Of a stretch of 64,000 bases of DNA, positions 6,601 through 38,959 are shown piece after piece. The stretch's first letter is position 1. Every line of letters starts with the position of its first letter. Made by a program: the position numbers and the translations under genes. The notes beneath the pieces were generated by a model, which saw only the letters and a program-made list of their open reading frames with translations, did not search any database and was not told the DNA's origin. Origin of the DNA: Styela clava (lineage: Eukaryota); assembly GCF_964204865.1 (NCBI RefSeq), contig NC_135259.1, positions 10,664,001 through 10,728,000 of the forward strand, given 5' to 3'.

Positions 6601-6820
6601 TGTATTTGATACGCTGACCGCTGCATATGTATTTTTAGTTCAATAAGGTTTTCTCTTGAAACTAATGGTCATCTCACTTTGATTTTGGAAAAGCGGATTA
6701 AATTGAAAGGTATAATTTTCCCCAATTTGCTGTAGTTTTATGCCTATGGTATAGAGATAAGTATCAAATACAAAATGTATATACGCAAATTATTTTGGAC
6801 TGTTGAAAAAAGTGAACTAA

Positions 6821-16500: not shown

Positions 16501-18887
16501 CTATTTCTAGATGATTTAGACTTTGGAGGCTCAATTTTTTATAACTTTGGTGTTGAAGTGCGTGCTATATTAAATTGCAAATATATTTGCATTCTTAATA
16601 TTTTGTTTCTTAATTTATTTGCAAAGTTGCTTGTCTGTATCACGTGTATTTATAATAATAATTTACCATTTTTACTTTCACTGCTAATTACTTCACAACT
16701 AATATGAAAATCAATGGAGGACTTCTAATGAAAAATACCTTCAAGTATAGTTTTTAGTGATTAAATCAAAGGTGAATTTTTAACGATGAAAAATGACATT
16801 ACCTCTGTTCGTCCAATGATAATCTTCACTTAATATTTCTTCTGTTTTGTCTTTATCACCAAAAGCCCAAAGGAAGTTATTGTCTCCTTTCTAAATTATA
16901 TTTTGAATTATTTTGCTTATTAACATAACATGCTTCAGTGGCGTTTTCACAAAAAAGGAAATATCCCGCAAGGTAATGTGAATAAGATGAAAAAGGGCCT
17001 TTTATGTTCAGCATATTGCAAAGCTCCCATTTTTAACTCGTTCCGAAAAAAAAAACGTACATTCACATTTTTCTATTCAGTTAAGTTATTAATATTATTT
17101 AAACTCAAAGTTTATTTAATTTCAAATATGCGTGGATGTAAACATAAAAACACTTTACAAATATCTCGTTGTCTTTTGTTGTATCTTCAGATTTAAGTGG
17201 TCGTTTAATTTTCATATAGGTTGTTCCATTTTCAGCGCTGTCAAGTATTGTCACATCTTGATCGAAATCTATTTGCACCATTCCCGTCATTTCAGAGTAT
17301 GCATCCTGTGAGAATGATTATATAAATAAATTATGTATGTATATTCACAAATTGTATAAACAAACATATACAATGACCAAGATTTAGGATACCCGTTTTT
17401 TTGATCAACTCATTTAACAAATGAAAAACGTTCTTCGCTGGCTCTCGCATTAAATAAAGGAAATTCCATGAACTACAAAAAAATCAATTCTATATTGATA
17501 CCGTTTCGGGTACAATTTGAAAAATATAGCAACTATTGACGTTAAAATGTGATTAATCCATGTTTTTACCCAGGCGTACGGTTTTCCATCCTTTATGCCC
17601 ATTATGATGAGATCTGCTTTTTGCATCGTTTTTGTCTCTGAAAATCCAATTCCGACCCATCCCAAAGTTGGCGCAGAGACCTTGAAAAATAGTTATTACA
17701 AATCTTCTATCCGTGACGTTAGATTTATATTGTAATGAAAAAGTAAGTGATTTGTTAACCACGGGGTTATAGTGTGAAAATGCCCAAATGAGTGAGCAGA
17801 CATAACGTGAAATACATTTTGTAATTTAATCACGTAATACAAAACATATGTCTTTATTTCAGATAAAAGTTTGTAAGTATTGCCCAAACATTTTATTTAT
17901 CTTTATAAAACAAAGATAAAAAAAAAAAGTATAAATATGTCAGTTTTATATAAATTACTGGAGCTCCACCCTATACTCATGCCTGTTTGAATTCTGCTTC
18001 CTCTTAGATATTTGCAGGTATATAAAATGCGCGAGATTCATTAGCGCAATGTAACAAACATTTTTGAATTAAATTGTATGGTAAGGCAAAGGCTGTAATT
18101 ACCACGAGTCTATAGGCTGACAACTTAATGTTACGTTAGTACTCGTAAACGCTGGATAGCTTGCTGCAAATTAAGAAGAAAAGTGTTTTGAAATTAATAT
18201 AAAATGTAAGAGTCCAGAGTCACTTTTAATTACTTTGCCTCCGGCTGCATACTTATCGCCGTATCAATCAGAACGTAAAACACGATAAACAATATTGTTT
18301 TATTTTTCGGAAGATGTGATAGCTTTCTAAGAACGTGCCTCCGAAGCTTTCAGATAGCCCATGGCACATTCTCTCACATTATTCATTACATGCGACTTAT
18401 CACACGTTGTCTTAAAACAGGGCCCTGTCCTCATGGCGTTGAGCAAATATAAAGTTTCGGCACACAACCCACAAGTGGTATACATTATGGCGGAATATAT
18501 TTGACCCGTTGATCGCTGCATGTTTTCTTTTTCAAAATTTAATTAGTTTTTTCTCGAAAACTAGTGGCCATCTCACTTCGCTTTTCGAGATGCGGATTGA
18601 ATTAAAATTTACAATTTTTTTGAGTAGGCATCAGCTGCAAAATGTATGTACACAAACAATTTTAGACTGTTGATAAAAAAGTGAACTAAGATCAATTTCT
18701 TGACAAAGCACAATAAAAGACGATACAGCGTACTTTCACTTACTTCAAATATTATATCTTCGCCATCAAACTCCCAACCAACTGTAAAATCTTTTTCCAT
18801 AACTTCTGAAAACTTCAATTTTGCTTCACTTACGACAGTAAGCAATAACAAAGACGCTGAAGCTAGCAACATGGCCGTAATTTTCAT
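10518..18887 (-). CDS. MOXD1: Double-DOMON DBH-like (copper type II, ascorbate-dependent) monooxygenase, copy B, ~819 aa, membrane-anchored
   Basis: 20 GT-AG exons joining in frame: 18887-18744, 17680-17570, 17305-17159, 16890-16803, 16433-16389, 16318-16152, 16031-15921, 15808-15662, 15189-15099, 14888-14838, 14157-14027, 13814-13740, 13389-13185, 12972-12809, 12663-12569, 12438-12288, 11958-11862, 11401-11262, 11104-11009, 10721-10518 (2460 nt). Signal peptide; two DOMONs (GWVGIGFS..M..AD and GWIGIGFS..M..AD); CuH ligands VHHL and ETHYDNP; CuM ligands LHGHL and EMC; hydrophobic C-terminus. The symbol denotes family, not proven orthology. Confidence 0.9.
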
Positions 18888-19189
18888 TGTATTATTTATA
18901 CCTGTGTAAGAATAATACAATTACTGTTTTAAAGTACCCTCAAGCCAAAATAATCGAGACAGTTTCCTAAATCGATAGAGAAATAGTGCTTCAATCACGA
19001 TAAAAGGTAGGAATCAAGAATAAACATCTACGAAACCCATTTGTCATATGATCTATGACGTAGGTGCTTTCAAACAATTATATATAAAGTGCACCACAAA
19101 CTTATAATAGCAATCTTCTGACAAAAATAGGCTAAAGCGATTCAGTGATATGTCATTTTTTAAGCATATAAGATGCGCTTGCAGACAGC

Positions 19190-19545
19190 GAGACAAGCCT
19201 TTCACTATTCAATGTGGCCATTTCCGCAAATCGCACGGTATTCAAAAGCAAACTTAATCTAACACGAATAATTCCCTACTGTCGTGACAAGGCATTATTG
19301 CGCGAAGTTTCTTTAATATGAGATGCTCAATCTCAGATTACTTTAAAATTAAATTACCTCAGAAAGCAATCAACAAACATAAGAGAAAAAAAATTGTATA
19401 GTTTTTTGCTGAAATTTGAATAAAAATCCTTTATATGTAGAAAAGTTACGCAATTTGTTGTAATTTGATACGTATTAACATCGCCGCAGGCCTATTAGCA
19501 AAAGTGCTGGGTCACTCTCAATATTACACCATTGCGTCGCAACCA
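19190..19545 (-). promoter_or_regulatory. Upstream non-coding block shared by all three copies (candidate cis-regulatory region)
   Basis: Alignable with 8720-9090 (copy A) and, inverted, 44450-44820 (copy C); includes ATTCCCTACTGTCGTGACAAGGCA. Retention may simply reflect recent duplication. Confidence 0.3.
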
Positions 19546-20278
19546 AACGAAGTAGGAGTACAATAAACATCGTCGGTATTTGTCGATCTTTTCCATTCAT
19601 AATACGATGGTGCTCACTTTCCTTTCACCGACTGATTTATTCATTTTAGTGCAATTGCTATTCTGGCATCTATTTTCAAAGATTATTTTGGAATACGTGT
19701 AACGAAGATTTGACTTAGACTTTAAATATATAAATGAATCATCCTAGATAAAACCCATTATCATTGTTTGCTATCGTCATATCGTGATGTTATCTCCAGG
19801 AAAACGATGTTAAAACGACCTCATCTAATATAGATAACTGGATTTGTTCAGTATACAATCTGTTTGTTTTTTTCGTCCTTAATATTACCTTCGTCTACTT
19901 ACAGAGCAGAGAACAAAAATGCCAGTATCAGTGATTGTTTTTCCTTTTAACAATTTATTTCGCTGTTCCACTTGGCTATACGATGTCCATATTAAATTGC
20001 TTCCAGACAAAAATGTACCAGACGATACGATTACTTCAGGTGCGTGAAAAAGGATTAGATAAATGAATAGGTAATTATCGGAAACGCCCATTTTAACGCG
20101 AAGGCAATTGGAAGGTGCGAATTATTGAACAGAGTATTTAAGTGACGTGTTTAATCGCGTTAAAACTGATTGAATTTTCTGAGTAATTATATATTCACAA
20201 ACAACTAATTGTTGCATATTCCTATTATTTGAGACCCCCCCATCAGTATATGAGATGAGATATAGTTGTGTACAATAA

Positions 20279-21455
20279 CAAGTGAGCAACGCTCAAATAT
20301 ATGGCAACGTGGACCAGAGCGAAGCATTCCCTACCTTTGACGTTACCGGTACCATACTCTCAAAAACTTCCGAGTTTTTAGTCGCCAGAATTTTCAGAGT
20401 CATCCGTCGCGCTTGACGGATTAAAAACCGTGTTTCCATAATTAAAAGTAATAGATCTCAATTTTGGATGAAATATTAGATCTCATAACGTCAGGCCAAT
20501 AACCGAATTGCGTAAGTCATTTTTGGCGGTTTTGAGTTTTTTATAAAATAGGTATTTATGTAATGCTGCGCACCTGTCTGTTAACTCAGATTTTATTTTA
20601 AGAATTACGAAACCCATAAATATGAAGATTTTGTCTGATATGCAAATTTGTTCAATTGTTTCGTCATAAGGAATTATCATTGTTAACGCATGGTTATTGT
20701 GACGTCACAAGGACAAAATAACCTCGGCGAAGGATTTTCAAGTTTTTGCATCTCAGATTCTAGCTCAGCGCTTATAAATTTGAATTTATACTACAGTATA
20801 GGAAGGCGTGCACTTGTGATATTCACTGTCTGAGTCCAATCTTAGTCTTATTTCGGTGAGTGTGCAGAGCGTGTTATATTGATGGAATATATATTTTTAA
20901 ACACAAAAAATAATGTAATTGAAACAGATTAGCTATTTTGAGGATTAGACATCGTAGATACTAAGAATTACATTCGTTTTTGAATTGTTTGGTTTTCAGG
21001 ACTGGTCCATATAGTCAAGTCGCAAAATTGCGTATGTCCCCAAGTCATAGACACATTTCTGCCTAGGTCACAGTGCGCCATTATAACGTCACATAACTGC
21101 GTCATACAAATTAACTTAAAACCGGCTACGATCAATAACTTGAACTATGACAAATTATTGACTCTCAATGGCATAGCAATATCATTAGGAAGTTTTTTAC
21201 ATTTTTTATCAAAACTGCTAAAAATGACTTACGCAATTCGGTTATTAGCGTGACGATAAGATTCATAGAAAATTTAGGAATAAATAAAAGTAATCGCATT
21301 CTGGCAAAAAAATCAATTTTTAACTACTGAAAATTTCAAAGCAATTGGTTCAGTATTCGAAGAGAAAAGCGACTTTATCATGACGAGAGAGAAGAATATC
21401 AACAAGAACAGAAACATAATATCAAAACGATCAATAGGTCTACACACGTGTCCAA
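20279..21455 (-). mobile_element. Helentron-associated (HINE/DINE-like) non-autonomous repeat, interrupted by a MITE
   Basis: Same family at 24581-24785, 43088-43480 and 43481-43722; ends flanked by TT, short 3' hairpin GAGC-nnn-GCTC, no clear TSD. Class is inferred from structure. Confidence 0.5.
20489..21255. mobile_element. 767-bp MITE with ~45-bp TIRs and 4-bp TSD (ATAA)
   Basis: CGTCAGGCCAATAACCGAATTGCGTAAGTCATTTTT... is inverted at 21209-21255; ATAA on both sides; empty site in the mirrored arm (~43265). Confidence 0.85.
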
Positions 21456-22237
21456 TAATATATTCTTGATTGAATATTTTTTGATGAAAGATTTCAGATT
21501 CGTTCAAAAATTATAAATTGTATCATTGATTATTTATGTAGGTCGATGTTTGGGGTAAAGGCCTGTGAAATGCCTAATAAAAACATGTCCAGGTTAAAAT
21601 TTTTGTGTAAGTGGCATCATTTCACTTTCTGCTGTAATATTCGGTCTATTCGGACCAAACGATCTCCAAGCTATCACACAGTGGAACATACCATGACATA
21701 TTTATTGTGCGTCTAAAACAAACAAAAAAAATCTACCCAGAGTGTCATAAATACGGAGATTATGTTGAGAACATCATGAGAACTGGAAGTATTCCATATT
21801 CTATTAAAATAGATGGTATTTATTTAGAAAATCATCCCATTTCCTCATTTTGTTGTGGCTATATAAGTAGTAGAACAAGTTATATGAGTATAAGCATTTG
21901 CATACATTAGATCTGGGGTCGCCAACCTACAATATATGGACCAGGTGAAGTTCGCCAGGGCAGGACATCCGTCCCTGGACATATTTGTAACTATAAAAGC
22001 GGAAAAGTTTTCTTGTTTTGCATAATATCTGTTATTTTGAGTGCGTGCGTCTTAGTTTCTTTCTTCTTTGTAAACGACCACTTTTATATATTATCACCGT
22101 ATGCACATCAGATATCTATGATATCGCGTATGTGAAAATAAACTTAGATTCAAGTGCCAACGGATGCAAACGTACGATGTGCAAATATCGGGCCACGTTA
22201 ACAACCCGCCGCTGCATTCCGTGTCACTTATTAATAA

Positions 22238-25200
22238 TAGTCCGGCAGAATCGGGCCTATTGTTTTGGGACATAACGTATTTTTTATTGTTTAGATATAA
22301 TGTATATGACATATATAATGATACCCAGGTGGTTGTGGAGTATATAATGTTGAGCAATTTTTTTTAAGTGGATTTAAAGTAATCGGTCCAAGATGACGCA
22401 CATCTTGAACCCTGCCCTGGTAAACATACAATGTTCAGGTTGTGCGCCATCTTGGTACGAATACTTCAGGAGCGCCTTTTCGTTAAAAACAATTATTTCA
22501 CAACTACATGGTTTAGTTTTGCATACATAGTAACATTGAATCTCCTTACAATGTCAGAAATTCAATTTTAGTAGAATAAATGGTAGTTTATTTCACTAAT
22601 ACAAGCCAAGATCCATCGACAGCATCTAGCCACTTTCTATTGCGCTCTTCAAACTACATTTGCGTTGCCGCGCGCATTTCGTTTTCCTAGTTTAAGCTTA
22701 GGGACTTGGGAAATATTTTATTAGTTGAATTGGATTGGAATATTTGACTTCGTCTTTCACTCCGAACAAGGCCATGTAAAACCATCTACTGGTATCTAAA
22801 GATGTGTAACGTGTTTTCTTTTGGAAGAACCGCAACCTTTGAACCTGCGAAACCTAGATGTGCACGTGTTATGCCAACATAGTTGAGTCAAACGTTTTGA
22901 ATACTAGTACATCACACACATTTTCCTGTGTGCTTCGGTTGTACGTAGTAACGCGCACATGCATCAAATTCCACTTGATTTTTGAGCTATAAGGTTTTTG
23001 ACGAGCTTTTGTGTATGATTTCATTCCATAGAATTTGTATGCTGTTCTAAAGAATACTAGTTTCAGCTTTTTCATTCATTCAAACCGCGTGTTGAAAGTA
23101 ACTTTTGTAATATTGCGTGTTGGTTTCCAACATCCTTAAATCGGTGATGCCAGTAAATCTTTAATACAAAAAGACCAGTAACATCTGCAATAAAAACAGC
23201 AGTACCCACTCAAATGACAGCTGGGGGATGGATACTCTTACTATCTGCTCCATCGCGTGCTTCTTACAGTCTTACCAGTTTACATGAGTGCCAATTGGTA
23301 TCTAAGCTCAGCCAGAGACAAAAAGTTTCGGACTGCAGTTGGCGTGACGAAATGTTTTTGAATATATATTCTACAATAAGATTATTTGATTGCATACTAC
23401 TGAAAGTTCCGCCTTATATGTCTTTTCTCATTGCACTATTCCTTTACTGATATTCGATAATATGACGCTCATTTGACATAGTTCTTAAAGTGTGTAGATG
23501 GGTATAATCTTTTCCACGCTGTTTAGATGGGAATGCGCGAATATATATAAGAATTGCTAATATTGGTTTGCAATGCGATGAAATTCCATCTTGGCATTTC
23601 TGCCTCTCGCAATTGCTGCGTATACTTATCGGGGAAGTTCTGTGGCGTGGTTATCAAATGAAAAAAAAAACATGGGAGTATTTTTTCTACTTCTCTACTA
23701 CTATCAAACCTTGACATTTTGTGAAAACGTTTTTCCATGCAACCTTTTTTTTAAACATTCCTAACAACCACAATTGATTCTGTTATTAAACTTCCGGAAC
23801 AAACACATAAAATCATCAACAGATGCATATCACCAAGTAGATATTGCTGAATTAATCTTTGTTTTACCATTTTTCATGTAATTCTTTTTGGTAAGCCTGT
23901 TATCTATCGTAAATACAGCACATTTGACAATGTTGTAGTGTGACTATTTTGGCCTCACATTTTTGATATTTGTAGTTAGAGCTCTTGGGGCTCTGCCAAA
24001 AAAGTTACATACAAAATATTGGTTGTAAATTGCAAAACATGATCATGTTGTTGGAATAACTTGGCATTTTACCACCCGTATATCATTCATTGTTGAGAAT
24101 ATTAATAAAATCATAAAATTTAAAAATCCGTTTCCGTGAAATTTTTGTTGTAGCTGCTTCTAACAAAGAAATTCATGTGACCAAGCCTCATTGCACTGTA
24201 TCCGACACTAATAAATAGGACACCCAGTATGATACAATAAGAATAACAAGGGCATGAATACAAATCAGCTGATATAAGAGAGTATTGCACCATCATTGGC
24301 AAAACTTTCTCTCGGTCAAAGTTCTTAATACAAACAAACAAATAAATAAACGAGAGCAAGTCTAAACATGTTTATCGGGACCAGAATAACTAAAACTAAT
24401 AGGTTAATCACTAAAGTTAACTTTCTGCCTGTAACAATGACAACAGGCAAGAGAAGCAAGGTCGCCTCTTTTAGTTTATGACAGGGTTCCTTAAAAGGGA
24501 CCCCGTCCTCCTTGGAGGCCGCTGATCGGTTGGTTATCTGGGAGCACGAACAAACAGATGGAAATGCGAATATATAATAACAAGAGAGCTATGCTCAAAT
24601 ATATGGACAAAATAAAAAGTAATAGCCTTCTGGAGAAAATTTTTATCTTTAACCACTGAAAATTTCAAAGCAATTGGTCCAGTATTCGAAGAGAAAAGCG
24701 ACTTTTTAAAAACGTGTCAAAGAACAAGAACAACAACAACAACAACATAATATTGAAGCGATCGTTATGTCCACTACTTGTCCAACAATGTATTTTTATA
24801 GAAGAGAAAAAGCAAAAGTGCTGAGAGTCTTTGGTAGTTTGAAAAGCATTGGCATGGAACATAAGAATGAACTACATTCTTTCCCAGGGATATACTATAA
24901 AATATAGCAAATTTCTCATTCTTGTTCTCGTGATATCACTATCTTTCACTGCGTCGTCGTGATTATCCCGCTGCATAACAATTCTCGCTAACAAATAATT
25001 GACTGTTCTCCACCGGGTGTATATCCACTTGAACCACTGGCGACTGCATTAGCAGGCTTGTATTGTTAATTGCAACAAAAACGGGTATTTTGAAATAGTA
25101 CTCTTTATTTTACGCGTATGTTTCGACAGTATTTCCATATACTGTATATGGGTCGCTACCCAAAGCTGGGCTCAACAAATGCCTAAAAGTTATTGATTTT

Positions 25201-25480
25201 ATTTCCTATTAAATTTGGTGATTGCGTAGTTTGTGCACCAAGATTGCGCACAACCTGAACATAGTATTGTAACAGATTATGGTTCAGGTTGTGCGTCATT
25301 ATGATGCACAGGTTTGACGAAAAACACTAATGCAAATATCGAGCCGTAAAAAAATTGCTCAAGGCTGCAAACTCCACGCCGATGTAGAAATGATGGGCAA
25401 TGACCCCAAGATGAATAATCACAAATTAAAAAAAAACTTTATGTCTGAAATCAAACTTGGGCCAAAAAGGTCCCCTTATC
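22238..25480. mobile_element. Long-TIR DNA transposon derivative (Academ-like TAG...CTA ends), copy 1; right end cut by an LTR
   Basis: Direct duplicate of 59130-61930; degenerate TIRs of ~250 bp; the last ~10 nt of the right TIR are replaced by the retroelement LTR. Confidence 0.7.
24581..24785 (-). mobile_element. HINE/DINE-like insertion inside the long-TIR element
   Basis: Absent from the sister copy (61228-61240 reads TAATAACAATGTA); same family as 43481-43722. Confidence 0.7.
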
Positions 25481-25635
25481 TGTTCATAAAACATAGCGAG
25501 AGAATGTTTTTATTCTGGAAATAAGTCGGCTCAGGCATATGAATCATATATATCTCGTAAAATTGTATTTTCCTTTGCGATTAGCTCGTAAAACTTAGTA
25601 ATTTTCTTTTCGGTCAGCTCGCAAACTTGTCAACA
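25481..25635 (-). repeat. 155-bp 3' LTR
   Basis: On the minus strand TGTTGACA...ATGAACA (TGTT/AACA termini), preceded by purine-rich AAAATCAGGGA and containing AATAAA; mirrored at 42170-42291. Confidence 0.7.
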
Positions 25636-25648
25636 TCCCTGATTTTGA

Positions 25649-26110
25649 TCAGTTCCCTTGGTATCGGCCCTCACATAATAACACGTTTGGGTTAGATGTT
25701 TTCAATGCCGATGAACCCACGTCCCTTGGCGAGTTCGGATCAATGGAGATTGCTCTCATTTTCTTCCGAACTTTTGCCTTTCTTGTCCTAGTAAAATGTA
25801 TGTACTTTCGCGTCAGGGATCGCGTCGCCAACCTAGTTTGTAGTATGGATTCTACGTTTTTTGCTCGCGTTACATGCTATAGTGTTTTGTTACTAGAATA
25901 GTCATTATATGCTGGCGCAGTTCACATCTGGCCGTACGCTGATGCTAAGCCACTTTCTGTAACGATAACCCCTTCACTGCCTTGCATTACTCCCTGCGAG
26001 TAAGTCTTTTGGTATCTGACGCAAAGTTGTTTCTGTGAAGCATTCTGCAGTTGCTCCCATGGGTGGAAACCTTCGCTCGCAAATGAGCATTACCCAAGTC
26101 TGCAGTGGGT
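25649..26110 (-). pseudogene. Tpt1/KptA-like RNA 2'-phosphotransferase domain at the 3' end of retroelement pol
   Basis: L*HVTRAKNVESILQTRLATRSLTRKYIHFT...VRK..ISID...DVG...TSNPNVLLCEG matches the Tpt1 C-lobe pattern (HxT, SIL.xGL, RxxIH, R, ID, N.VLL..G). Upstream PMGA...SNARQ.R...SAYGQ weakly resembles the N-lobe. Confidence 0.7.
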
Positions 26111-29100
26111 TACCAAGACGCACTGTATTTTCTCTCTTCTTTCTCTTTTTTTTGTCTTTTAGCGTAGCGTGCATTTTGTTCTTTGTTTTGTCTGGCGACA
26201 TAGTATGTGTGGCCCACGCGCCTGTTTCATTTGACGTAAAGGACATTTCCATTCAGAATGCGCGAGGAAGACCATCGGAGGTAAAAACTATTTGAAATCC
26301 TGATAAGTGATTCAGCCATCTTTGTATCATTATTGGGTTTTTCGAGTTCTCTTTCATTCTCTTTAGTGGGCCAAATACTCCCGTATTGTCTGTTTTGATA
26401 ATGAATGGTATTGCGTACAGAATAGACTGCCACTTATCCACCGACTTGTTCAACAATTTTAAACCTTTGTACATGAGTCATACGCTCTTGCCGCTGGAGT
26501 GATCCATTTCTGGCTGAGGTTCCTTCCCCTTTACTGTTTGGAACTGGATTGCACCAAACCAATTTTCCGAAGCATTTGTCTCGATGTATAACGGGAATTT
26601 CTGATAGACATGGTATAATATTCTTGTGTTGTTCAATTGACTTTGTGCGATTTTATATTCTTCCACTGATTTATTAGTCCACATTACTGGCGTTACCCTA
26701 CCACGCGTGGCAGGTACTTTCTTAGAGCGTCGAACTTCGCCAGTTTCAGGCTTAGCGCAGCAGGGATATGACCTGATATACACCATAAGGATTCAATCCA
26801 GCATCTAATTTCGTATATATTCCGAGGTGGAGCCAACGTATATGTAATCCTTCTACAGCTATTCCGAGGAAGGCGTTTGATACTTCTGTCACATCGCAAT
26901 GAAAATAGGCTTTCTTTATGCCAAGAAGCGTTAGCACTTCCCTTTCCTGGGCCATTTGCGGGGGTGGTATTTCAATCGGTTTAATTGCAGCATTAAAGTT
27001 TGAAGATTTTGTACGACCCTCCAAGATTATTGCCAGCTTGCTTTAGTCGCTTATTCATCTTCTAGGGCGCTACAAATATCGCTAGTTTCCTTTATGAAAA
27101 CACCGTCTCTATTACTCCGAGGTCCAAGAAATATTTCACGGCTCCTTCGAGTGCTTGGCCCTTTCCCTTCAGGTTGTACAGTCCCGAGACAAAATGTTTT
27201 ACTGCCGACTTCTTTAACTCTATGTGTCCAGCTTTTGCGGCGATGATAAGTGACCCTTTAGGTCTTCTAATTCCCTGGCATAGGGGCCATTTACTTGCCC
27301 GTCCATCCTTCTTCCGAGATTATGGTATTTTCAGGTTAATTAAGTTCTGATTGGCATAGACTTCTTTTGCAAGGGCTATCGCCTCAGCGCCCAACCTTTG
27401 CCATTCTTCTCTTACTTTGTTTGGCGTGCCTTCTTTCAATATATAATTTCTTATTAGTTCGTACGTCGTAACTTGTCTATTTGGTTTAAGCATGACGGAT
27501 GATTTTCCTGCACTCCGTGAGTCACTCTTAGGTTCCCCGACTGTCATTGCCAAATCACTCATGCACGACGATGAGTTATTCATTTCTGTGGTTATCGATT
27601 GCAAGACTTGCACCTGTCCCAGTCATCCGAGTCCAAATTAGAGGAATCTCTTTCCACGTGACAAAAGGAACTTCAAGCCCATCCATATTTACTATCATTA
27701 GTAAATTTACTTGGCAACATTCTCCTATGCCCTTTAGGTTCATAGTAAGGGGTCGGCGGTTTTCCCAACTTGGATTATTTTGCTATTTTCATTGTCATTA
27801 ATTTCGGTACAGCTGAAAATATGGCTCCATTTTTTCATCCCCTAAATACATTAGTTCCCCCCCACCACCCTTTCACAAAAATACCAATAAAATTTATGTC
27901 ATCAGAGTTTTTCGGCCTCCCCAAAAAGCTGAAAAGAGGCAGGTTTTCATAGTTCATAATATTTAAACATTAAACATTCACAGGGTAAAGTTTTTTCGGG
28001 AAGTTGATGTACCGGTCCCATCAACTTCCGTACTAGTTTTCCGCCAAATCCAGGCCTTGCTTCATCTTGGATAAAGTTAATCGGGGCTGTTGCTGCATTG
28101 ATTGTAGCTCGAGTTAGTTGCGAGTTCCAGTGCGACCTCTTTCACCAATGGGTTCTATCCCGGGTTTTTGGTCTGTACCCGAAATATCTCTCACACAGGC
28201 TAGCTCTTTCCTCTAATGTTGGGGCCCTTGGGAGTCAAGGTACTTATTCAACTAATTTACATCGCGTAACCAAACCATCAGCGGATGGCAACCGTTTAGG
28301 AATCGGGACCACTTTTCCTCGCATTCTTGTAATAAATTATCAGCAATTTTCTCATTCTTGGCTTTATTACCCATTCTTCCTTATCATTTTTGTTCAATGC
28401 TATATTATTGATCCATAGCATTGATTTTACCATGCATGTTAGTCGCGATGTACCCAGGTGCCTTGCACAGGTAACACACTGATAGTGATTGACCGTTACT
28501 CGGTATGATGTACAGCCCAAGCGCTGCGAAAATGTTTGGTTGCGCTAAAAAATCATTTCGCCCACCTTCTTCATTTGCTAACACTGCGAGAGGTTGTTTC
28601 ATGATCAGTCAATTGATGCTGTCGTGACCCTTGTTGCTGAGGATATGTTCGTGGCGATGTTTGCTGTGAGCATTATTGTGGTGGCGTACTCTGTGGAGAT
28701 GATCGCGATGGCTTAATTCGCCCTCTCTCTCCTCTCTGGGTTTGAGACATTTTCCACGGTCTCTCTTTCTTTTTTGCTTGCCTTGTTATGGGCGCTATTG
28801 TCCGCTGAGTCGACAATTCGCTATTTACAGGGTACGAATGGTTCAGATATCCTTGCAGCGATGGGTGTATATTATATACATTCACCGGTGGGGGTGTGTA
28901 TGCCGGTTGCGACACGAGCATCGTTGCTATTAGCGAGTTGACCGAGGCGTTCGGATATCTTCCTCGCCTGTTCGTTGCCCCTACGGCTTGGTTATCCAAC
29001 AACTCGAAAATTCCAAAATTTTGTGGCAACCTTTCTCCAAGTATAACGTTTTTTGAACCAAATAAACACCATTTTTTATAAATGAATTTGTAAGTATGAC

Positions 29101-30182
29101 ATATAAACATACAATACTGGAGTCTTCCACGTGAGGACTGGTATTCTAGACTGGCGAGTCGGTTCTTCGGTGATGCTTCAGTAGCCTTGTTCCTAATCAA
29201 TACTTATTTCATTAGTTAATCAGGATGGGAAACGACTAAGGCTACTTGCAGTTTGCGTTTCCCCTAAGTGCTGTCTTTCCACGGCGTTCCTTTGACGTAG
29301 TGCATTCTTTGTCCTGTCCCTTTTGCAGACATACAGAAACAAATTCCGATGTTCACCGGTCCCGTCGACAAAGGTCCTCGCCCTTGTATGTCAATCTTTG
29401 TCTACACCAACTCGAGCCTCAGAACGACCCGATTCTGCCTATCTTATTTACTTTAATGGTTTAAACCTTAATACAACCAAATACTCCAATATTAGTTTGG
29501 TATACAAATATATACAAAACACAATTTAACCAAACTAATATACACATTTAATATATTAGACCGTTGTCTACAAAACATTTTATAACACCAGCTTGATCTC
29601 AGAAATAATATATTTATCATTCAATATTCTCAATATATACTAATCACATAATACTTTGACAAATGTCATGTTATGAAATATTCGATATACATTGGAATAT
29701 CATTACACACGCGAAAGATATTCGGCATATGATGTAAAATACTGTAACAAAATCACATTGTTCATCGATGTTAGTATTACCATATAAAACACAAGACCTA
29801 ACGTAGGGTGCTTGTGCAAAATCAACCATAGACCTTCAAGGATTTTAAATCGGTGTAAATTTCCCATTATAAACACCTAATATGGTGCGTTGGACTTGTG
29901 AAAATGTAATCTGACATGGCCATTGCTCCCAAAACAATCCCAATGGTGCCTCCTTTTTTCAAGTGTTTTTTTCTGCATCGTTATTTACCCGTATATAGGT
30001 ATGTATACAACTTAGAACTTACTGGTAACTACATTCGGGTTCTTTTCATTATTTTTTAAAATGCTGGGGGACAATTGTTTAAAGACACTTATGTCGATAA
30101 CATTCAGCAACAGACACCTCGATTTACAATGAAATAAACCATAAGTTAGTTGCCAACATTTATATTATAAACAGGACGATAA

Positions 30183-32244
30183 CACTGGCCACGCATGTTT
30201 AGTGCCCAAGGTTTCTAAGCTGATTTAGGTTAATTTAGGGGTGGTGAGTACGAAAATTATACTAGTTTTCTCTCATCAGGTCAAATTGTTGAAATATTTG
30301 CTATTTTATAACTTTTTGGTGCTTGGGTTGTGTGTGCACCAAGATGACGCACAATCTGAATCTTTACCTGATACACGTACTATGTTCAGGTTGTGCGCCA
30401 ACTTGGTACACATTCTACTCAAGCGCCCCCTTTTTACCTTAAAATTAAGGGGATTTCTATATCCATTTCAGCGTTATAATTGCAAGTATAGGTTTTAATT
30501 AGGTTTTAATTGCAAGTATAGGTTTTATTGCCATACGATTATGACATCACCCACCTTAAAAGTAAAAGTCAAATTTGCTATATAAAGAGATAAAGTGGAC
30601 ACCGTGTAGCAAATAAGCCTGCCGATTGTTGCATATTTTGTTAAGTAAGACATGAAATAAACAAGCTGCTATGTTTTGCTTCAGTTGCAGATGTTTGGAG
30701 CAAAAATTAAGCATGGCTACATCTCTTCTCCAAGGCGACATTGTTTAAACAATTTGAATTTATTTTGCTATATTGCGGAGAATATACATTGCAATCCAAC
30801 AGAAAAAGGATCAGTAAATTTGTGAAGTGTGCTTATCTTGCCTACTTCAATGTTATGCTGGGTGATCAGGATAAGGTATGGGCACCACATATTGTATGCA
30901 AGCAATGTGTTGAGCATCTTCCATAGTGAACAAAAATGGATAGAAAGTCACTCTGTTTTGGTATTTTAATGGTCTTGAAAAATTATTTTGATGACTGCTA
31001 CATCTGTGCAGTAAACACGAGGGTAATCAATAGGAAGAACGGTAGATCGTTAGTTTATTCAAACCTCGAGTCTGCAATTAGACTAATTCCACAATACAAT
31101 GAAATTCCTTTTCCAGTGTTTGAAGGCTTGCTCGAATTGGAATTGCCTGGCTCTGAAGAAGACTAAACCTCCGTTTTGTCCACTGATAGTAGTGAATGCG
31201 CTGTTTCAGACGTCGGTTTTTATTCTTTTTCACTGCCATAGTATTTTTCTCGTGGATAACTGAATGATCTGACTAGAGATTTCAACTTTTCCAAAGAATC
31301 TCCTGAATTTCCAGTTCCAAGACTCTCATAACCTTCTATAGAAAACGCCTTATTGAATTTTGTCATATTTCACTCAGGAAAAAGACATAGTATATTGCAA
31401 CGACGTTGCCGGCTTGCTGCGGCAGCTTGGTGTCCAAAATTGAAGCCTTTTTATAAACAAATCCAAAAAAAGTTTAAAATGCGTTTTTCTTCACAATTCT
31501 GGCTCCTCCTTGGGTTGAGCGTTACAAAATTGTGTTTTCTCCTCTTACATAAAGCTTGGCAGTTTGTGAATGCTCTTGAGAAAGATGGCGATTGTTTCAA
31601 ATATATTTGCAGGAAATTTTCAAGTCTAGCCGCAGAAAAATTAAAAGCTGGAATTTTTGATGGACCCCAGATTCGAAAGTTAATTATTGATGCAACTTTC
31701 TGTAATTTTATGAATGCATGAACGGCGTTTACAAATGTAGTAAATTTTTTTGAGGGGAAATTAGAGGCGCCCAACGACAAAGACTTTGTTGAAAAACTAC
31801 TCACGAGTCTCCGTCAACTTGGTGCAAATATAAGCATCAAGTTGCATATTTTGCACAGCCATCTTGCCTGTTTTCCAGAAAACTTGTTGGTCTATTAAGC
31901 GCGATGATGCCGGGGCCTCCCATTCTGGAAAATCAGCGAAACGTCAATTTATAGTTGATGGCATCTATTAGTTAGCATTTATTACAACAATTATTTACTA
32001 ATTGTAAATATTTTGGTGAGATTCCATAAATAAGTTCAATGCATTTACAGAAAAATGTTGTTTTCTTCAATTTGTTTATCTTTATGGTAGCTATCGGTCA
32101 TCCTGCAGAGAGTTGTATACCATAAAAGAAAAACTAGACCTGATAGAGAAAAAGTAACAGCATTTCTGGAATCAGCGCCCTCAAATTTGCTGAAAATGGT
32201 TAAAACATCTTAGGCTCCATAAAATTTTTTTTCGTCGGCTAGTG
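30183..32244 (+). mobile_element. Chapaev3-like (CMC superfamily) DNA transposon, decayed
   Basis: Ends CACTGGCC / GGCTAGTG with TAA TSD (30180-30182, 32245-32247); transposase motifs CGEYT, LGDQDKVWAPHIVC, DDCYIC, KLKAGIFDGPQIRKL, SIKLHILHSHL..FPENL; multiple stops. Confidence 0.85.
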
Positions 32245-32419
32245 TAATATATGTTGCACACATCAGCCATTTTGTTTTCGCCTCGTGGCCGCCATTTTGT
32301 TCTTAGGTCTGGTTATATTAGGAATTTTCAACTGTTCCATTTTACAATTATTTATGGGTTTTAATGTACAAGTTGACTTTTTATATAAACTTCTGTTTTG
32401 TGTGGGTTATTTGCAAAAC

Positions 32420-33310
32420 TTACTAATTTTGTAGTGACAAATTTCACGATAATGATAGTGCAACAATAGAAGTATTTCTTAAATTCTTCGATGATTTAGT
32501 CTTTGAACCAGTGATGGTGAAGAAACAAATAGGTCCGCTCAACAACATGTACAATGCCACATCAAGTATGGCAATATGGACTGATACCATAATGGAAGAA
32601 ATGAAAACATTTTCGAGGCTTACTCTGCTTATAGGTCTCATACAATACCCGAAGAAAAAAAAGTATTGGAAAAAAGATCCACGTTAGTATCATCTCATTT
32701 CCCACCAAGTTGGCATGAGCTACAACAGATTTGCCTTCCTACTGAGAAATTGGCACGTAGCAAATAACCTCAACGCTCAACAAAGTGATCGATTGCATAA
32801 AGTTGCAAAGTTTTTACAGTTGTTCATTTCAAATATCAATCGATTTATGTGCTTACAGGTAAAATACCAGTGAATGAAACTATGATCTCTCACAACAAGA
32901 ACAGCAAGTGTCGGACAAAGGCCTAAAAAAATTCTCATGCTCCAAGCCAAATCCTCAAAAGAACAGATGAAAAAATCTCCAGGAAGATATGCCATCGCTA
33001 TTATGAAAACGATTTACATGAGAACTATTGATGTGGACCCTGACATTGGGTTGATATTTTGCATTCAAAACTTTCGTTTGTATGTTTTTTCCTCATGATT
33101 GTATGTGCCAATGTGGAACATTCGATTTGTGCAGTGCATGTAGATATGATAAAATGCAAATGCTTCACACGTTCTGAGCAATAAATTTCTTTTCTATGAT
33201 AAGGTCTAACGTTTTCTGTGCTGTTTAAAAAACTGGCTTTTTTGCATCACATGCGATGCACCGACGTCAGAGCAGTATGTCATGTGTATCACATTTAATG
33301 CATCCCTTAA
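32420..33310 (+). mobile_element. piggyBac (PGBD4-like) remnant, internally deleted
   Basis: EMKTF..LTLLIGLI...YW...MSYNRF..LLRNWH...DRLHKV...V(D/N)ETMI, followed by a Cys-rich tail; inverted sister copy at 37740-38950. Confidence 0.75.
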
Positions 33311-35000: not shown

Positions 35001-35339
35001 AAAAATAAAAACTAGATTGTCAGATGCTTGCTGATGATCGAATTAATCTTCTCTGTTCATTGTCTCGATGTTTTACAAGTAAAAACACGTTGCATTCTCA
35101 CATGTTTCCATCCCCGATAAAAATATTCCCAACCAATTCTCATTAATTGAAGAATTAAATGAATATGAAATCAAAATAACACGAACTAATCGCAAATGAA
35201 ATGGACAAGGATATGAGCTAACTGCACGGCCGCATGGAAATTAACAATGAACAAATGTTTTATTTCATTCATCAGTATTCTTATATAGATAAAAATTGTA
35301 AAAGCTCATAGCTTTTGAAAAAAAAAAATACATCTTGTA

Positions 35340-36260
35340 TCCTGTTAACAGATGCCGAATCGAATGCTGAGATAAAGGTTAAACAACTGGCGGTGTTAGG
35401 AGTGCTATCCAGTATAACGGACGGTATAAAATTTCTGCGAGACAAAAGGTTATTAGCAAGTCATATGCATTGTTCAAAGTGCAAGAGAGTTATGACTGAA
35501 GAGATTACGAAAACAAATAAATTAGATGTTGTGAGATGGCGTTGCAGGCAAAATGACTGTAGAAATACTGCAGTCATTCGAACGAATTCATTTTTAAAAA
35601 GGAGTAAAATTGATTTAATGAATTTGATAATATTAATTTACTGCCGAGCTATAGACATACCGCAACGATAGATATCTTACGAACCGATGTACGCCCGCGC
35701 ATTGTAGTCGATTGGCTACATTTTTGTACAAAATATTGATAAGTTCGACCGAATTGATAAGAGAATTTAAACGAATCGTAGAACCGAGTTTAGTTGTGGC
35801 CATCGACAGCTAATCGAAAAAGAAATTTGGTTATTTGGAGGAATATGTAGACGAACAAAAGAATTATTCATTGAACTAGTGCCGAAAACAGGTGGAACAA
35901 AAGCCACAATGGAAGATTTGATAAAGTCAAATAGTGAGCCCGGTACGAAATATGGAGCGATTGTTTTGCCTTCTATTGCGATATAGTAAAAATGGGACTA
36001 GGGTATAAACATCGGACGGTAAATAATAGCAAAATGTACATTACCGATGAAGGCGTCCAAACTAATGAAATTGAAAACAATTAATCAAATGGCAGAGAAA
36101 AGTCCAAGTGAATGCATGGGGTAAAAATGGCGATGATTGTCCTTACCTAGATGAGTAGCAGTGGAGGCGAAAGTATCCTTACCATACACATTTCATGAAG
36201 ATATTTGAAGCAATATCAGTGGATCTTAAATATAACGTAAATGACTTGAGCAGTCAATAA
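35340..36260 (+). mobile_element. Merlin (IS1595/ISXO2-like) transposase pseudogene
   Basis: N-terminal CSKC...WRC...C zinc ribbon, then IWLFGGICRRTKELFIELV, PGT.IWSD, Y.HRTVN, G.QTNEIEN; frameshifted; TIRs not located. Confidence 0.85.
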
Positions 36261-37739: not shown

Positions 37740-38950
37740 TAAGGAATTTTCCCTGTCCTGTGAATTACATGTGGTACAGATCACATACTGCTCTGACGTC
37801 AGTGCATCACTTGTGTAAACAGCACAGAAAACGTTTGACCTTATCATAGAAATCATAGAAAAGAATTTTATTGATCAGAACGTGTGAAGCATTTGTATTT
37901 TACCATATCTACATGCCCTGCACAAAACGAATCTTCCACATTGGCACATACGATCATGAGGAAGAAGAACATTAAAACGAAAGTTTTGAATGCAAAATAT
38001 CGTCAGGGTCTACATCAATAGTTCTCATGTAAATCGGTAAACATTCCAAGCAAAAAAAGCTTTTTGCACTCTATGCATTCTGTAGAGACTGTTTTGTTTT
38101 TGTTGTTGCTTGTTGTCGGTCAGAAGTTTTGGAAATTTTTTCATAATAGCGATGGCATCTCTTCCTGGAGACTTTTTCATCTGTTCTTCTGGAAATTTGG
38201 CCTAGAGCATGAGATACTTTTGTAGGCCTTTGTCCGACACTTGCTGTTCTTGTTGTGAGAGATCATAGTTTCATCCACTCGTATTTCACCTGCAGGCACA
38301 TAAATCGATTGAATATTTGAAATGACAACTGTAAAAACTTTGGCAACTTTATGCAATCGATCACTTTGTTGAGCGTCGAGATTACCTCCTACGTTCCAAT
38401 TTCTCAGTAAGAGAACAAATCTGTTGTAGGTCACGCCAACTTGGTGGGAAATGGGAAGATAATAGCGAGGATCTCCAGAAATGTCTTCATTTCTTTCTTT
38501 ATGGTATCAATTCATATTGCCATTCTTGATGTGGCATTGTGCATGTTGTGGAGCGTACCTCTTTGTTCAAAGACTCAATCATCAAAGAATTGAAGAAATA
38601 CCTCTATTGGTGCAACATCATTATTGTCGTAATGCACAATATTTTTACTTAGTCCACTTCTACCATAAAACGCAATTTGAGCTTTTGCTGTAACGTCTTC
38701 TTTCCAATATGTACAATTCTGTCTTTGTGGCTATTGTATGTTTGTTGGGGGAGGAAGAACAGGATTGGTATCGTTAGAATCGGATTCCGAAGCCCAACAG
38801 TCAATTGTGGATGTATCATTGTCTGTTGGTTGAAATTCTTCGTCACTGTCAGCCACCACTTTCGTCACTGTTTGACTCACTATAATCGTCATCATTATCT
38901 CTCTTACGTTTTCCGTGAAAAATTCCGTATTAAATGAATTGTACGAAGAA
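37740..38950 (-). mobile_element. piggyBac (PGBD4-like) remnant, inverted copy
   Basis: ORF 38177-38434 (YNRFVLLLRNW...DRLHKV...IRVDETMI) and an acidic N-terminal region (38731-38900); ends near TTAA at 37739-37742. Confidence 0.75.
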
Positions 38951-38959
38951 TCCGTACAT

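What the first reader, a model, noticed from the sequence alone, without database searches (positions are those of the whole stretch)
25649..26110. LTR retrotransposon carrying a Tpt1/KptA-like NAD+-dependent RNA 2'-phosphotransferase domain at the end of pol
Seen: after RNase H and a Lys-rich stretch, one minus-strand frame reads ...LICERRFPPMGATAECF...SNARQ*RVIVTESGLASAYGQM*...KTL*HVTRAKNVESILQTRLATRSLTRKYIHFTRTRKAKVRKKMRAISIDPNSPRDVGSSALKTSNPNVLLCEG and stops about 14 nt before the LTR. The mirrored copy (41700-42156) has SILQTGL. The domain is intronless and inside the element. Known: the Tpt1/KptA C-lobe has HGT..SI..xGL..R.xVH...R...ID...G...N.VxL. The enzyme transfers RNA 2'-phosphate to NAD+ during tRNA splicing, and some homologues also ADP-ribose-cap 5'-phosphate DNA/RNA ends. 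The usual gypsy pol C-terminus is integrase with or without a chromodomain. Inference: a retroelement lineage captured an ADP-ribosyltransferase-fold enzyme, possibly to heal the tRNA primer, cap cDNA/RNA ends against nucleases or ligation, or counter host defence. I do not know this as a standard gypsy architecture, but could not check the literature. Both copies share two stops, so they were dead before duplication.
Basis: partly seen in the sequence, partly recalled or inferred. Interest (0 to 1): 0.9.

Follow-up and report, generated by a model that had tools for sequence, protein, structure and literature searches.

The report
Transposase-bounded retrovirus-like element with Tpt1 domain
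The window holds two decayed mirror-image copies of the end of a polymerase gene from a sea-squirt mobile element whose intact relatives fuse reverse transcriptase and RNase H to a Tpt1-type RNA 2'-phosphotransferase domain, and which carry a Merlin-type transposase with short inverted ends where a retrovirus-like element would have integrase and LTRs; I found no published description of this combination.

Summary
The Tpt1/KptA-like reading is real. It lies at window 25652-26128 (-), with a mirrored copy at 41638-42138 (+). Both copies are dead and share two in-frame stops.

Elsewhere in the genome, which is Styela clava or a near relative, intact relatives encode a Pol of about 1000-1070 aa. 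Its order is aspartic protease motif, RT, RNase H, Tpt1. The evidence for the Tpt1 domain:
- It passes Pfam's cut-off.
- It folds confidently (pLDDT 89) onto solved Tpt1/KptA structures (TM 0.7-0.8).
- It keeps the full Arg-His-Arg-Arg catalytic tetrad and the NAD-binding His/Thr.
- It is under purifying selection (dN/dS 0.17).
- It forms its own clade, and the host's Tpt1 is the weakest cellular match tested.

The "LTR/gypsy" label does not. There are no LTRs and no integrase.

In at least six diverged lineages the Gag-like and Pol genes lie downstream of a co-oriented IS1595/Merlin-type DDE transposase. Five of these also keep an env-like glycoprotein gene in between (the window copy does not). 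Where ends could be mapped, the whole 12-14.7 kb unit is bounded by about 25-bp GG-initiated inverted repeats and 8-bp target duplications.

The substrate of the Tpt1 domain and the role of reverse transcription are inferred, not shown.

The parts
25528..25651 (-). 3' untranslated terminal segment of the left (minus-strand) copy. The element terminus reads ...CCTGAGCC at 25528.
   Evidence: The terminal 18-mer matches its mirror at 42228-42245 with 2 mismatches, against 0.02 matches expected by chance. It ends in GAGCC, like the young family's 3' end.
25652..26128 (-). Decayed Tpt1/KptA-like domain at the end of Pol (left copy). In-frame stops lie at 26092-26090, 25924-25922 and 25879-25877. 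Catalytic His41 is now Leu, Arg83 is Gly, and the GHS His is Gln.
26160..28039 (-). Decayed protease-RT-RNase H part of Pol (left copy).
   Evidence: tblastn with intact Pol proteins: 40-64% identity in pieces, E as low as 1e-99.
28024..29069 (-). Decayed C-terminal part of the Gag-like ORF1 (left copy).
   Evidence: tblastn with ORF1 of the young family and of the C19 lineage.
35324..36254 (+). Decayed IS1595/Merlin-type DDE transposase gene. It is co-oriented with the right-hand Gag/Pol copy and upstream of it.
   Evidence: tblastn covers residues 1-319 of the intact transposase at 44-59% identity, E 2e-69. It is also listed as C13:10699342.
38936..40151 (+). Decayed Gag-like ORF1 (right copy).
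40115..41640 (+). Decayed protease-RT-RNase H part of Pol (right copy).
41638..42138 (+). Decayed Tpt1-like domain (right, mirrored copy). It shares the TGA and TAG stops with the left copy and has one extra frameshift between the two lobes.
42139..42245 (+). 3' terminal segment of the right copy. The terminus is at 42245.
15600..33200 (.). Left arm of a large inverted segmental duplication. Its partner is about 37850-48300. The arm contains the left Gag/Pol remnant plus host flank.
   Evidence: 32 inverted-repeat pairs at 83-96% complementarity.

Best explanation
The window's Tpt1-like stretch is the dead 3' end of Pol from an old, rearranged copy of a family of 12-15 kb mobile elements.

Intact members carry these genes on one strand:
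- a Merlin/IS1595-type DDE transposase;
- an env-like membrane glycoprotein;
- a small protein with a PWP3A-B_C-like domain;
- a Gag-like CCHC protein;
- Pol, read in the -1 frame, with the order aspartic protease motif, RT, RNase H, Tpt1.

The unit ends in about 25-bp imperfect inverted repeats that start with GG, and it makes 8-bp target-site duplications. It has no LTRs and no retroviral integrase.

Shown:
- This architecture, and its conservation across lineages.
- The Tpt1 domain is a true two-lobed Tpt1/KptA fold with the complete Arg-His-Arg-Arg tetrad and the NAD-binding His/Thr.
- The domain evolves under purifying selection.

Inferred:
- Gag-Pol is made by -1 frameshifting, so the Tpt1 domain travels with RT/RNase H.
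- There it uses NAD+ on phosphate groups of the element's nucleic acids. It either removes 2'-phosphates (internal or terminal) from template or primer RNA so that RT can use them, or it ADP-ribosylates 5'-phosphate ends.
- The transposase, not an integrase, inserts the DNA copy by recognising the terminal inverted repeats.
For: Tpt1 domain:
- Pfam PTS_2-RNA scores 28-38 bits (cut-off 26) at the C-terminus of intact 1007-1071 aa ORFs, after RVT_1 and RT_RNaseH_2, in three lineages and in public proteins P0004, P0135 and P0136.
- phmmer against PDB gives TkoKptA 9ld4 at E=1.8e-12 over nearly its full length.
- The AlphaFold2 model has pLDDT 89 and pTM 0.79. The top 22 Foldseek PDB hits are all Tpt1/KptA, and most full-length matches have TM about 0.65-0.8.
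- The tetrad R40/H41/R83/R136, H97, H116 and T118 are conserved in all intact element members. Residue roles are taken from PMC6333775, PMC6097658 and PMC12678800.
- dN/dS between two lineages (L017 vs L027) at dS about 0.4: Tpt1 0.17, RT 0.04, RNase H 0.05.
- The element Tpt1 clade has SH-aLRT support of 99. The host Tpt1 is the weakest cellular match tested, at 12 bits.

Element architecture:
- The young family is 14,706 bp with at least 10 copies; the three compared in full are 99.5-99.8% identical. Those three lack LTRs and share imperfect TIRs. TSDs are TATAATAC and TTCGGATC.
- A second lineage has TSD CAAGAGAG and GG TIRs and is about 12.0 kb long.
- The transposase scores 3.8e-16 on Pfam DDE_Tnp_IS1595. 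Two lineages pass NCBIfam's IS1595 cut-off (84 and 76 bits against 75).
- The Merlin hallmarks are taken from PMC8101967.
- The transposase and the Tpt1 domain are co-oriented and 6-15 kb apart in at least 6 lineages, including the window.
- No rve integrase appears in any Pol.
- A UUUAAAC slippery site followed by an 11-bp stem lies at the gag/pol overlap.
- The env-like ORF is conserved in 5 lineages (open in four). It has a conserved RRxKR site followed by a hydrophobic segment, long predicted helices and a C-terminal TM segment.
Against: - No enzymatic, transcript or cDNA data were available.
- It is unknown how a transcript could regenerate both terminal repeats, and no terminal redundancy or internal complementary region was found. 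Plain cut-and-paste transposition would explain the TIRs and TSDs without RT.
- The element Tpt1 clade has lost the conserved Lys two residues before the third tetrad Arg, and the 'IRA' Arg. Its chemistry may therefore differ from canonical Tpt1.
- The env-like call rests on sequence features and a weak language-model lead. The AlphaFold model of that ORF failed (pLDDT 32).
- The link to the transposase could not be checked outside this genome.
- One young copy is flanked by a 506-bp direct repeat instead of an 8-bp TSD. This is unexplained.
Confidence: 0.7

Rival explanations
1. It is a Merlin DNA transposon that merely carries captured retrovirus-like passenger genes. It moves only by cut-and-paste, and RT and Tpt1 play no part in transposition.
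For: It has every Merlin hallmark: an IS1595-type transposase, GG TIRs and 8-bp TSDs. No LTR, primer-binding-type redundancy or internal complementary region was found. The copies are nearly identical.
Against: - RT, RNase H and Tpt1 are under strong purifying selection between lineages (dN/dS 0.04-0.17 at dS about 0.4).
- Gag and Pol stay open and syntenic with the transposase in lineages whose transposases are only 46-52% identical.
- A canonical -1 frameshift signal is kept.
Passenger genes would not be expected to be maintained like this.
Confidence: 0.2
2. One reading: a conventional Ty3/gypsy LTR retrotransposon whose Pol ends in Tpt1 instead of, or after, integrase.
For: The RT and RNase H are of the RT_RNaseH_2 type. 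There is a Gag-like CCHC protein. The nearest named relatives of the RT are Tf2/gypsy polyproteins, at 22-28% identity.
Against: - No LTRs occur in three young copies aligned end to end, nor around either window copy.
- No rve domain occurs in any of seven Pols.
- The TSD is 8 bp, not 4-6 bp.
- The termini are inverted repeats, not direct repeats.
Confidence: 0.04
3. The window's stretch is a processed pseudogene, or a one-off capture, of the host TRPT1 next to a retroelement.
For: The window copy is intronless and dead.
Against: - The domain is fused in-frame to RNase H in many intact ORFs.
- The host's canonical Tpt1 (L001, 190 bits on Pfam) is the weakest cellular match tested to the element domain, at 12 bits.
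- The element domains form a separate clade with SH-aLRT 99.
Confidence: 0.01
4. The Tpt1-like domain is kept only as a structural or RNA-binding module and is catalytically dead.
For: Two positions conserved in cellular enzymes (the Lys at -2 from the third Arg, and the 'IRA' Arg) are lost in the whole clade. HGT is now H-[VLMA]-T.
Against: All residues shown to be essential are conserved in intact members: the Arg-His-Arg-Arg tetrad, the NAD-binding His/Thr and the His after the fourth Arg. The lost Lys is dispensable in the Runella and yeast enzymes (PMC6333775).
Confidence: 0.1

Closest known systems
Tpt1/KptA/TRPT1 NAD+-dependent RNA 2'-phosphotransferases (Pfam PF01885; e.g. TkoKptA 9ld6, P. 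horikoshii 8tfi, human TRPT1 7yw3)
   Same: It has the same two-lobed fold (TM 0.7-0.8), the same Arg-His-Arg-Arg tetrad, and the same GHS and H-x-T motifs.
   Different: It is not a stand-alone protein of about 180 aa. It is the C-terminal domain of a protease-RT-RNase H polyprotein. Identity to cellular enzymes is only 18-28%. The clade has lost the Lys at -2 and the 'IRA' Arg. Its activity is untested.
Merlin superfamily of DNA transposons (IS1595/IS1016-related)
   Same: The transposase is about 319-331 aa with a DDE_Tnp_IS1595 domain. The TIRs begin 5'-GG. The TSDs are 8 bp.
   Different: The Merlin elements described in the survey read (PMC8101967) are characterised by a transposase of about 319 aa. 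This family is 12-15 kb and also carries Gag-like, Pol (RT, RNase H, Tpt1), env-like and PWP3-C-like genes that are conserved and under selection.
Ty3/gypsy LTR retrotransposons and errantivirus-type endogenous retroviruses (Metaviridae)
   Same: It has a Gag-like CCHC protein, a -1 frameshifted Pol with a D-T-G protease motif, RT, RNase H of the RT_RNaseH_2 type, and an env-like glycoprotein.
   Different: It has no LTRs, no rve integrase and no chromodomain. RT identity is only about 25%. The env-like gene lies upstream of gag. The ends are TIRs and the TSD is 8 bp.
Teratorn (a piggyBac transposon fused with an alloherpesvirus in teleosts; PMC10175614)
   Same: A cut-and-paste transposase and its TIRs enclose a set of virus-like genes, and the whole unit multiplies in the genome.
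   Different: The viral partner here is a reverse-transcribing, retrovirus-like gene set rather than a herpesvirus. The transposase is Merlin, not piggyBac. The unit is 12-15 kb rather than 180 kb.
DIRS/Ngaro tyrosine-recombinase retrotransposons
   Same: It is a retroelement with a gypsy-like RT-RNase H, no rve integrase, an extra domain after RNase H (a methyltransferase in DIRS) and, as in DIRS1, inverted termini.
   Different: No tyrosine recombinase was detected and there is no internal complementary region. It makes TSDs, which DIRS elements do not. It carries a DDE transposase.

Membership tests
Tpt1/KptA (PF01885) | Profile match at or above Pfam's gathering score | tested here: met
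   Intact relatives score 28.4, 38.2 and 29.6 bits against a cut-off of 26. The window's own piece scores only 17.1 bits, because it is decayed.
Tpt1/KptA (PF01885) | Two-lobed fold: a winged-helix RNA lobe plus an ADP-ribosyltransferase-type NAD+ lobe | tested here: met
   The AF2 model has pLDDT 89. The top 22 Foldseek hits are all Tpt1/KptA, with E as low as 4e-12 and most full-length matches at TM about 0.65-0.8.
Tpt1/KptA (PF01885) | [quoted passage not shown] | tested here: met
   R40, H41, R83 and R136 (numbering of the L026 domain) are conserved in all intact element members. In the window's left copy they are mutated: H to L and R to G. The assignment of residues follows the Tko, Cth and Rsl numbering.
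Tpt1/KptA (PF01885) | HGT motif that binds the NAD+ ribose | tested here: inconclusive
   The His and Thr are conserved. The Gly is replaced by V, L, M or A across the clade.
Tpt1/KptA (PF01885) | NAD+-dependent removal of RNA 2'-phosphate, or ADP-ribosylation of a 5'-phosphate | not testable with these tools
   This needs a biochemical assay.
Merlin DNA transposons | IS1595/IS1016-type DDE transposase | tested here: met
   Pfam DDE_Tnp_IS1595 scores 3.8e-16 and 2.9e-12. NCBIfam NF033547 scores 84 and 76 bits against a cut-off of 75.
Merlin DNA transposons | TIRs of at least 24 bp starting 5'-GG | tested here: met
   The young family matches at 17 of its first 25 terminal bases, starting GGC. 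In the C4 lineage GGATCTAGTGAAG pairs with GGGTCTAATGAAT. The definition is taken from PMC8101967.
Merlin DNA transposons | 8-9 bp target-site duplication | tested here: met
   The TSDs are TATAATAC, TTCGGATC and CAAGAGAG. One copy instead has a 506-bp flanking repeat.
Ty3/gypsy LTR retrotransposons | Paired long terminal direct repeats | tested here: not met
   Self-BLAST of full copies and of both window arms finds none.
Ty3/gypsy LTR retrotransposons | rve-type integrase in Pol | tested here: not met
   No PF00665 hit occurs in three lineages here or in four public relatives. More distant gypsy hits do carry it.
Ty3/gypsy LTR retrotransposons | RT plus RNase H of the Ty3/retroviral type, with Gag | tested here: met
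   RVT_1, RT_RNaseH_2 and RT_RNaseH all hit. ORF1 has a CCHC knuckle, and a language-model lead points to Retrotrans_gag/PNMA.
DIRS-like YR retrotransposons | Tyrosine recombinase and an internal complementary region; no TSD | tested here: not met
   There is no recombinase hit in any ORF and no internal copy of the termini. TSDs are present.

The most novel reading that the evidence does not exclude
The family may be a previously unrecognised class of reverse-transcribing, possibly enveloped, virus-like mobile element. Under this reading it replaced the retroviral integrase/LTR system with a Merlin DDE transposase/TIR system: RNA is copied to cDNA, which the transposase then cuts and pastes. 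Its polymerase would carry a Tpt1 enzyme that uses NAD+ to heal or cap phosphate ends of the replication intermediates.
Probability: 0.4. Interest if true: 0.95.

Novelty: categorically new. Interest (0 to 1): 0.85.

Why it matters
Retroelements are classified by the enzyme that inserts them: integrase, tyrosine recombinase, or an APE, REL or GIY-YIG nuclease. A lineage that keeps Gag, protease, RT, RNase H and an env-like gene but pairs them with a Merlin transposase and inverted repeats would be a second, independent marriage of RT with a DDE transposase. The first such marriage is thought to have created LTR elements. It would also give a reverse-transcribing counterpart to Teratorn.

Tpt1 enzymes are widespread in organisms with no known 2'-phosphate RNA substrate, so their role there is an open question. 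A Tpt1 domain hard-wired to RT and RNase H, and kept by selection, points to a concrete and testable nucleic-acid substrate.

Practically, a RefSeq "probable RNA 2'-phosphotransferase" of Styela clava (XP_039263204.1) appears to be a fragment of this element's Pol rather than a host gene.

Tried and rejected
- **Ribozymes.** I tested whether Tpt1 clears the 2'-phosphate of a ribozyme- or tRNA-ligase-circularised RNA. Rfam at E<=1 over five loci, and at gathering score over the window, found nothing. The idea has no support, but it is not excluded.
- **Withdrawn reading.** I first read the clade as lacking the third tetrad Arg, which would make it a natural "step-2-arrest" ADP-ribosylating enzyme. 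Recounting against the TkoKptA numbering showed that I had taken the 'IRA' Arg for the tetrad Arg. The true tetrad Arg (in the K-x-R-F/Y motif) is invariant. I withdrew that reading. Only the non-essential Lys at -2 and the 'IRA' Arg are lost.
- **Env-like ORF.** The AlphaFold2 model failed (pLDDT 32), so no fold search was made. The homologue search found only a same-species fragment.
- **Other collections.** IMG/VR gave no relatives. The JGI/ENA metagenome scan gave two short marine contigs with close Pols but no flanks.
- **Word-index search.** A search with the Tpt1 region among Pol-sized proteins found nothing.
- **Window 5' end.** No convincing 5' TIR or TSD was found for the window's own copy. 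It is old and rearranged.
- **Literature.** Five full-text searches found no description of a Tpt1 domain in a retroelement, nor of a Merlin element carrying RT.
Full report
**1. The observation**

The minus strand of window 25652-26140 translates in one frame to a sequence that aligns along its whole length with the C-terminus of intact Pol proteins found elsewhere in this genome. Residues 851-1003 align at 50% identity.

- The 75-aa piece after the last internal stop hits Pfam PTS_2-RNA (PF01885) at E=0.006 over profile positions 105-176 of 177. This is below the gathering score.
- The frame carries three internal stops: TAA at 26092-26090, TGA at 25924-25922 and TAG at 25879-25877.
- It also carries substitutions at catalytic positions.
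- The mirrored copy at 41638-42138 (+) shares the TGA and TAG stops and has one additional frameshift.
- No LTR follows the stop. BLAST of each arm against itself finds no flanking direct repeats other than short MITE-like ones.
- Both copies end at a shared terminus...CCTGAGCC, at 25528 (-) and 42245 (+).

**2. The domain is a regular part of a Pol protein**

A six-frame search of the whole 377-Mb assembly with PF01885 found 24 places.

- One is a canonical, strongly matching Tpt1 (L001, 190 bits). A second, multi-exon locus lies on C8.
- Most of the others lie at the 3' end of open frames of 1021-1091 aa.
- In three diverged lineages (L025, L026, L027) the ORF reads, in order: about 390 aa containing a D-T-G motif, RVT_1, RT_RNaseH_2/RT_RNaseH, then PTS_2-RNA. 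The Tpt1 part scores 28-38 bits, above Pfam's cut-off.
- An upstream ORF of 870-960 aa carries a CCHC knuckle. A language-model lead points to Retrotrans_gag/PNMA.
- Pol is in the -1 frame relative to this ORF in all three lineages. In the young family the overlap holds UUUAAAC, then the ORF1 stop, then an 11-bp stem 5 nt downstream.

An exhaustive HMMER search of 1.8 billion cluster representatives found proteins with the same architecture:

- P0004, P0013, P0135 and P0136 were found in public (ENA) assemblies; contig sizes on record range from about 5 kb to 2.5 Mb.
- P0135 also has a retroviral-protease Pfam hit.
- None has an rve integrase.
- Their RT-RNase H region is 42-52% identical to ours. 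The next-best hits are Tf2/gypsy polyproteins with integrase, at only 22-28% identity.

**3. The domain is a genuine, probably active Tpt1**

- phmmer against PDB sequences gives TkoKptA at E=1.8e-12 over residues 2-171 of 180.
- An AlphaFold2 model built on a 70-sequence alignment has pLDDT 89 and pTM 0.79. Its top 22 Foldseek hits in the PDB are all Tpt1/KptA/TRPT1; most full-length matches have TM about 0.65-0.8.
[quoted passage not shown] Residue roles are taken from PMC6333775, PMC6097658 and PMC12678800.
- Two changes are specific to the clade. The Lys two residues before the third Arg is lost; it is dispensable in the Runella and yeast enzymes but needed for step 2 in TkoKptA. The Arg of the 'IRA' motif is also lost.
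- I first mistook the 'IRA' Arg for a tetrad residue, then corrected this by recounting the TkoKptA numbering.
- Between two lineages at dS about 0.4, dN/dS is 0.17 for Tpt1, 0.04 for RT and 0.05 for RNase H.
- In a quick maximum-likelihood tree the element domains form one clade (SH-aLRT 99) on a long branch. One unlabelled 185-aa protein falls with them and is probably another fragment.
- The host's own Tpt1 is the weakest of 84 cellular matches (12 bits). The best cellular matches include archaeal sequences. The origin of the domain is not resolved, but a recent capture of the host gene is excluded.

**4. The element is not an LTR retrotransposon**

Three copies of a young family were aligned end to end.

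- Homology is 14,706 bp long at 99.5-99.8% identity and stops at the same bases in all three copies.
- There is no terminal direct repeat and no internal copy of the ends.
- The ends are imperfect inverted repeats: GGCGCATGTTCAC...CAACGTAG pairs with GGCTCTAGTTCAC...CAACGTAG, matching at 17 of the first 25 bases.
- Two copies have 8-bp target duplications, TATAATAC and TTCGGATC.

Its first ORF (319 aa) is an IS1595/Merlin-type DDE transposase. Pfam gives 3.8e-16, and NCBIfam gives 84 bits against a cut-off of 75. GG-initiated TIRs of at least 24 bp, 8-9 bp TSDs and a transposase of about 319 aa are the published hallmarks of Merlin (PMC8101967).

A second lineage (C4/C9, 97% identical to each other at the 3' end) also shows GG TIRs. 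Its C4 copy has an 8-bp TSD (CAAGAGAG), and the TIRs enclose about 12.0 kb from the transposase to the end of Pol.

Genome-wide, transposase and Tpt1 hits are co-oriented and 6-15 kb apart in at least six lineages:

- the young family, with 10 copies;
- C9/C4;
- C19;
- C10;
- C1;
- the window itself, with the transposase remnant at 35324-36254 (+), Gag at 38936-40151 and Pol at 40115-42138.

The transposases of these lineages are only 46-52% identical to that of the young family.

Between the transposase and gag lies a conserved ORF of 809-844 aa. It is 38-41% identical between lineages and is found in five lineages (open in four). Its features fit a class I fusion glycoprotein:

- an N-terminal hydrophobic segment;
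- 14 N-glycosylation sequons;
- a conserved RRxKR site followed at once by a hydrophobic Gly/Ala-rich segment;
- long predicted helices;
- a C-terminal TM segment followed by a Cys pair.

I call it env-like with moderate confidence only. Its AlphaFold2 model was unusable and the language-model lead is weak.

A small ORF with a PWP3A-B_C-like domain is also conserved. The window's own copy shows no remnant of these two ORFs.

**5. The window in context**

The window holds an old member of this family caught in a palindromic segmental duplication. The arms run about 15.6-33.2 kb and 37.9-48.3 kb at 83-96% identity. The right arm, together with the unique centre, retains the order transposase, Gag, Pol, terminus. 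The left arm repeats only Gag, Pol, the terminus and host flank, in inverted orientation. I could not find a credible 5' TIR or TSD for this copy.

**6. How it most likely works**

Shown: the gene set, the ends, the TSDs, the conservation and selection, and the catalytic-residue conservation.

Inferred:

- (a) Gag-Pol is produced by -1 frameshifting, so Tpt1 is delivered together with RT and RNase H.
- (b) Because RT, RNase H and Tpt1 are under strong purifying selection inside a TIR-bounded unit, reverse transcription is part of the element's propagation. The transposase would then act on a DNA copy that contains both TIRs. A cut-and-paste enzyme can trim any extra terminal sequence, which would remove the need for LTRs.
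- (c) Tpt1 uses NAD+ on nucleic-acid phosphates.

For the substrate my estimates are:

- About 0.4: removal of 2'-phosphates from template or primer RNA, so that RT can read or extend it. The 2'-phosphate could be internal, as left by tRNA-ligase-type joining, or terminal, as left after cleavage by metal-independent RNases.
- About 0.35: ADP-ribose capping of 5'-phosphate ends of cDNA or RNA.
- About 0.25: something else, or a non-catalytic role.

No ribozyme or other Rfam motif that would point to a circular RNA route was found.

**7. Novelty**

Five full-text literature searches found no report of a Tpt1 domain in a retroelement polyprotein. They also found no Merlin or other TIR element encoding Gag or RT. 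A review that lists accessory domains of retrotransposon polyproteins names the chromodomain and the DnaQ-like exonuclease among the well-known accessory domains and does not mention a phosphotransferase (PMC6338049). The nearest concept is Teratorn, a piggyBac-herpesvirus fusion, described in 2023 as the first fusion of a cut-and-paste transposon with a DNA virus (PMC10175614).

The RefSeq protein XP_039263204.1 of Styela clava, annotated "probable RNA 2'-phosphotransferase", is 99% identical to a 230-aa open frame in a decayed copy of this element. This identifies the host as S. clava or a very near relative. It also shows that the domain has so far been annotated as a host gene.

**8. Limits**

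- There are no expression, read or biochemical data.
- The tree is a quick search without bootstraps.
- The env-like assignment is provisional.
I describe the copies without singling one out.

Noticed in passing
window 15600-33200 and 37850-48300: This is a large palindromic segmental duplication at 83-96% identity. Its unique centre (33.2-37.9 kb) contains the transposase remnant. The arms carry host sequence as well as the element's 3' half. The left arm has extra insertions at about 22.0-25.6 kb and 29.1-32.6 kb.
   Followed up: partly
G000 C2:23357623-23358128 and C2:23372837-23373342 (loci L028/L025/L029): One copy of the young 14.7-kb family is flanked by a perfect 506-bp direct repeat, plus 2 nt on the 5' side, instead of the 8-bp TSD seen in sister copies. 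It could be a very long target duplication from widely staggered end joining, or an insertion into a local duplication. It is unexplained.
   Followed up: partly
G000 C10:19385338-19385931: RefSeq XP_039263204.1, annotated 'probable RNA 2'-phosphotransferase [Styela clava]', is 99% identical to a 230-aa open frame in a decayed copy of this element. It is probably a Pol fragment annotated as a host gene.
   Followed up: yes
L001:1030-2136 (G000 C14:11064467-11065573) and G000 C8:15382710-15384227: The genome has a canonical Tpt1 (190 bits) as an intronless 369-aa ORF with a 150-aa low-complexity N-terminal extension. It also has a separate multi-exon TRPT1-like locus. Which one is the working host gene was not examined.
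   Followed up: no
window 22377-22497, 25211-25310, 30313-30427, 59277-59327, 61652-61740: A palindromic, MITE-like dispersed repeat of about 90 bp. It also occurs next to the young element copy on C2.
   Followed up: no
L028:6843-L025:2854 (element positions about 5713-8724 of the young family): About 3 kb between the env-like region and gag has no ORF over 90 aa and no Rfam hit. Its role (promoter, packaging or priming signals) is unknown.
   Followed up: no
protein P0012 (public ENA contig, 361 kb): A relative's predicted protein has RT, RNase H and a partial Tpt1 domain, followed by an Exo_endo_phos (APE-type) fragment. It may be a gene-model fusion with a neighbouring LINE.
   Followed up: no
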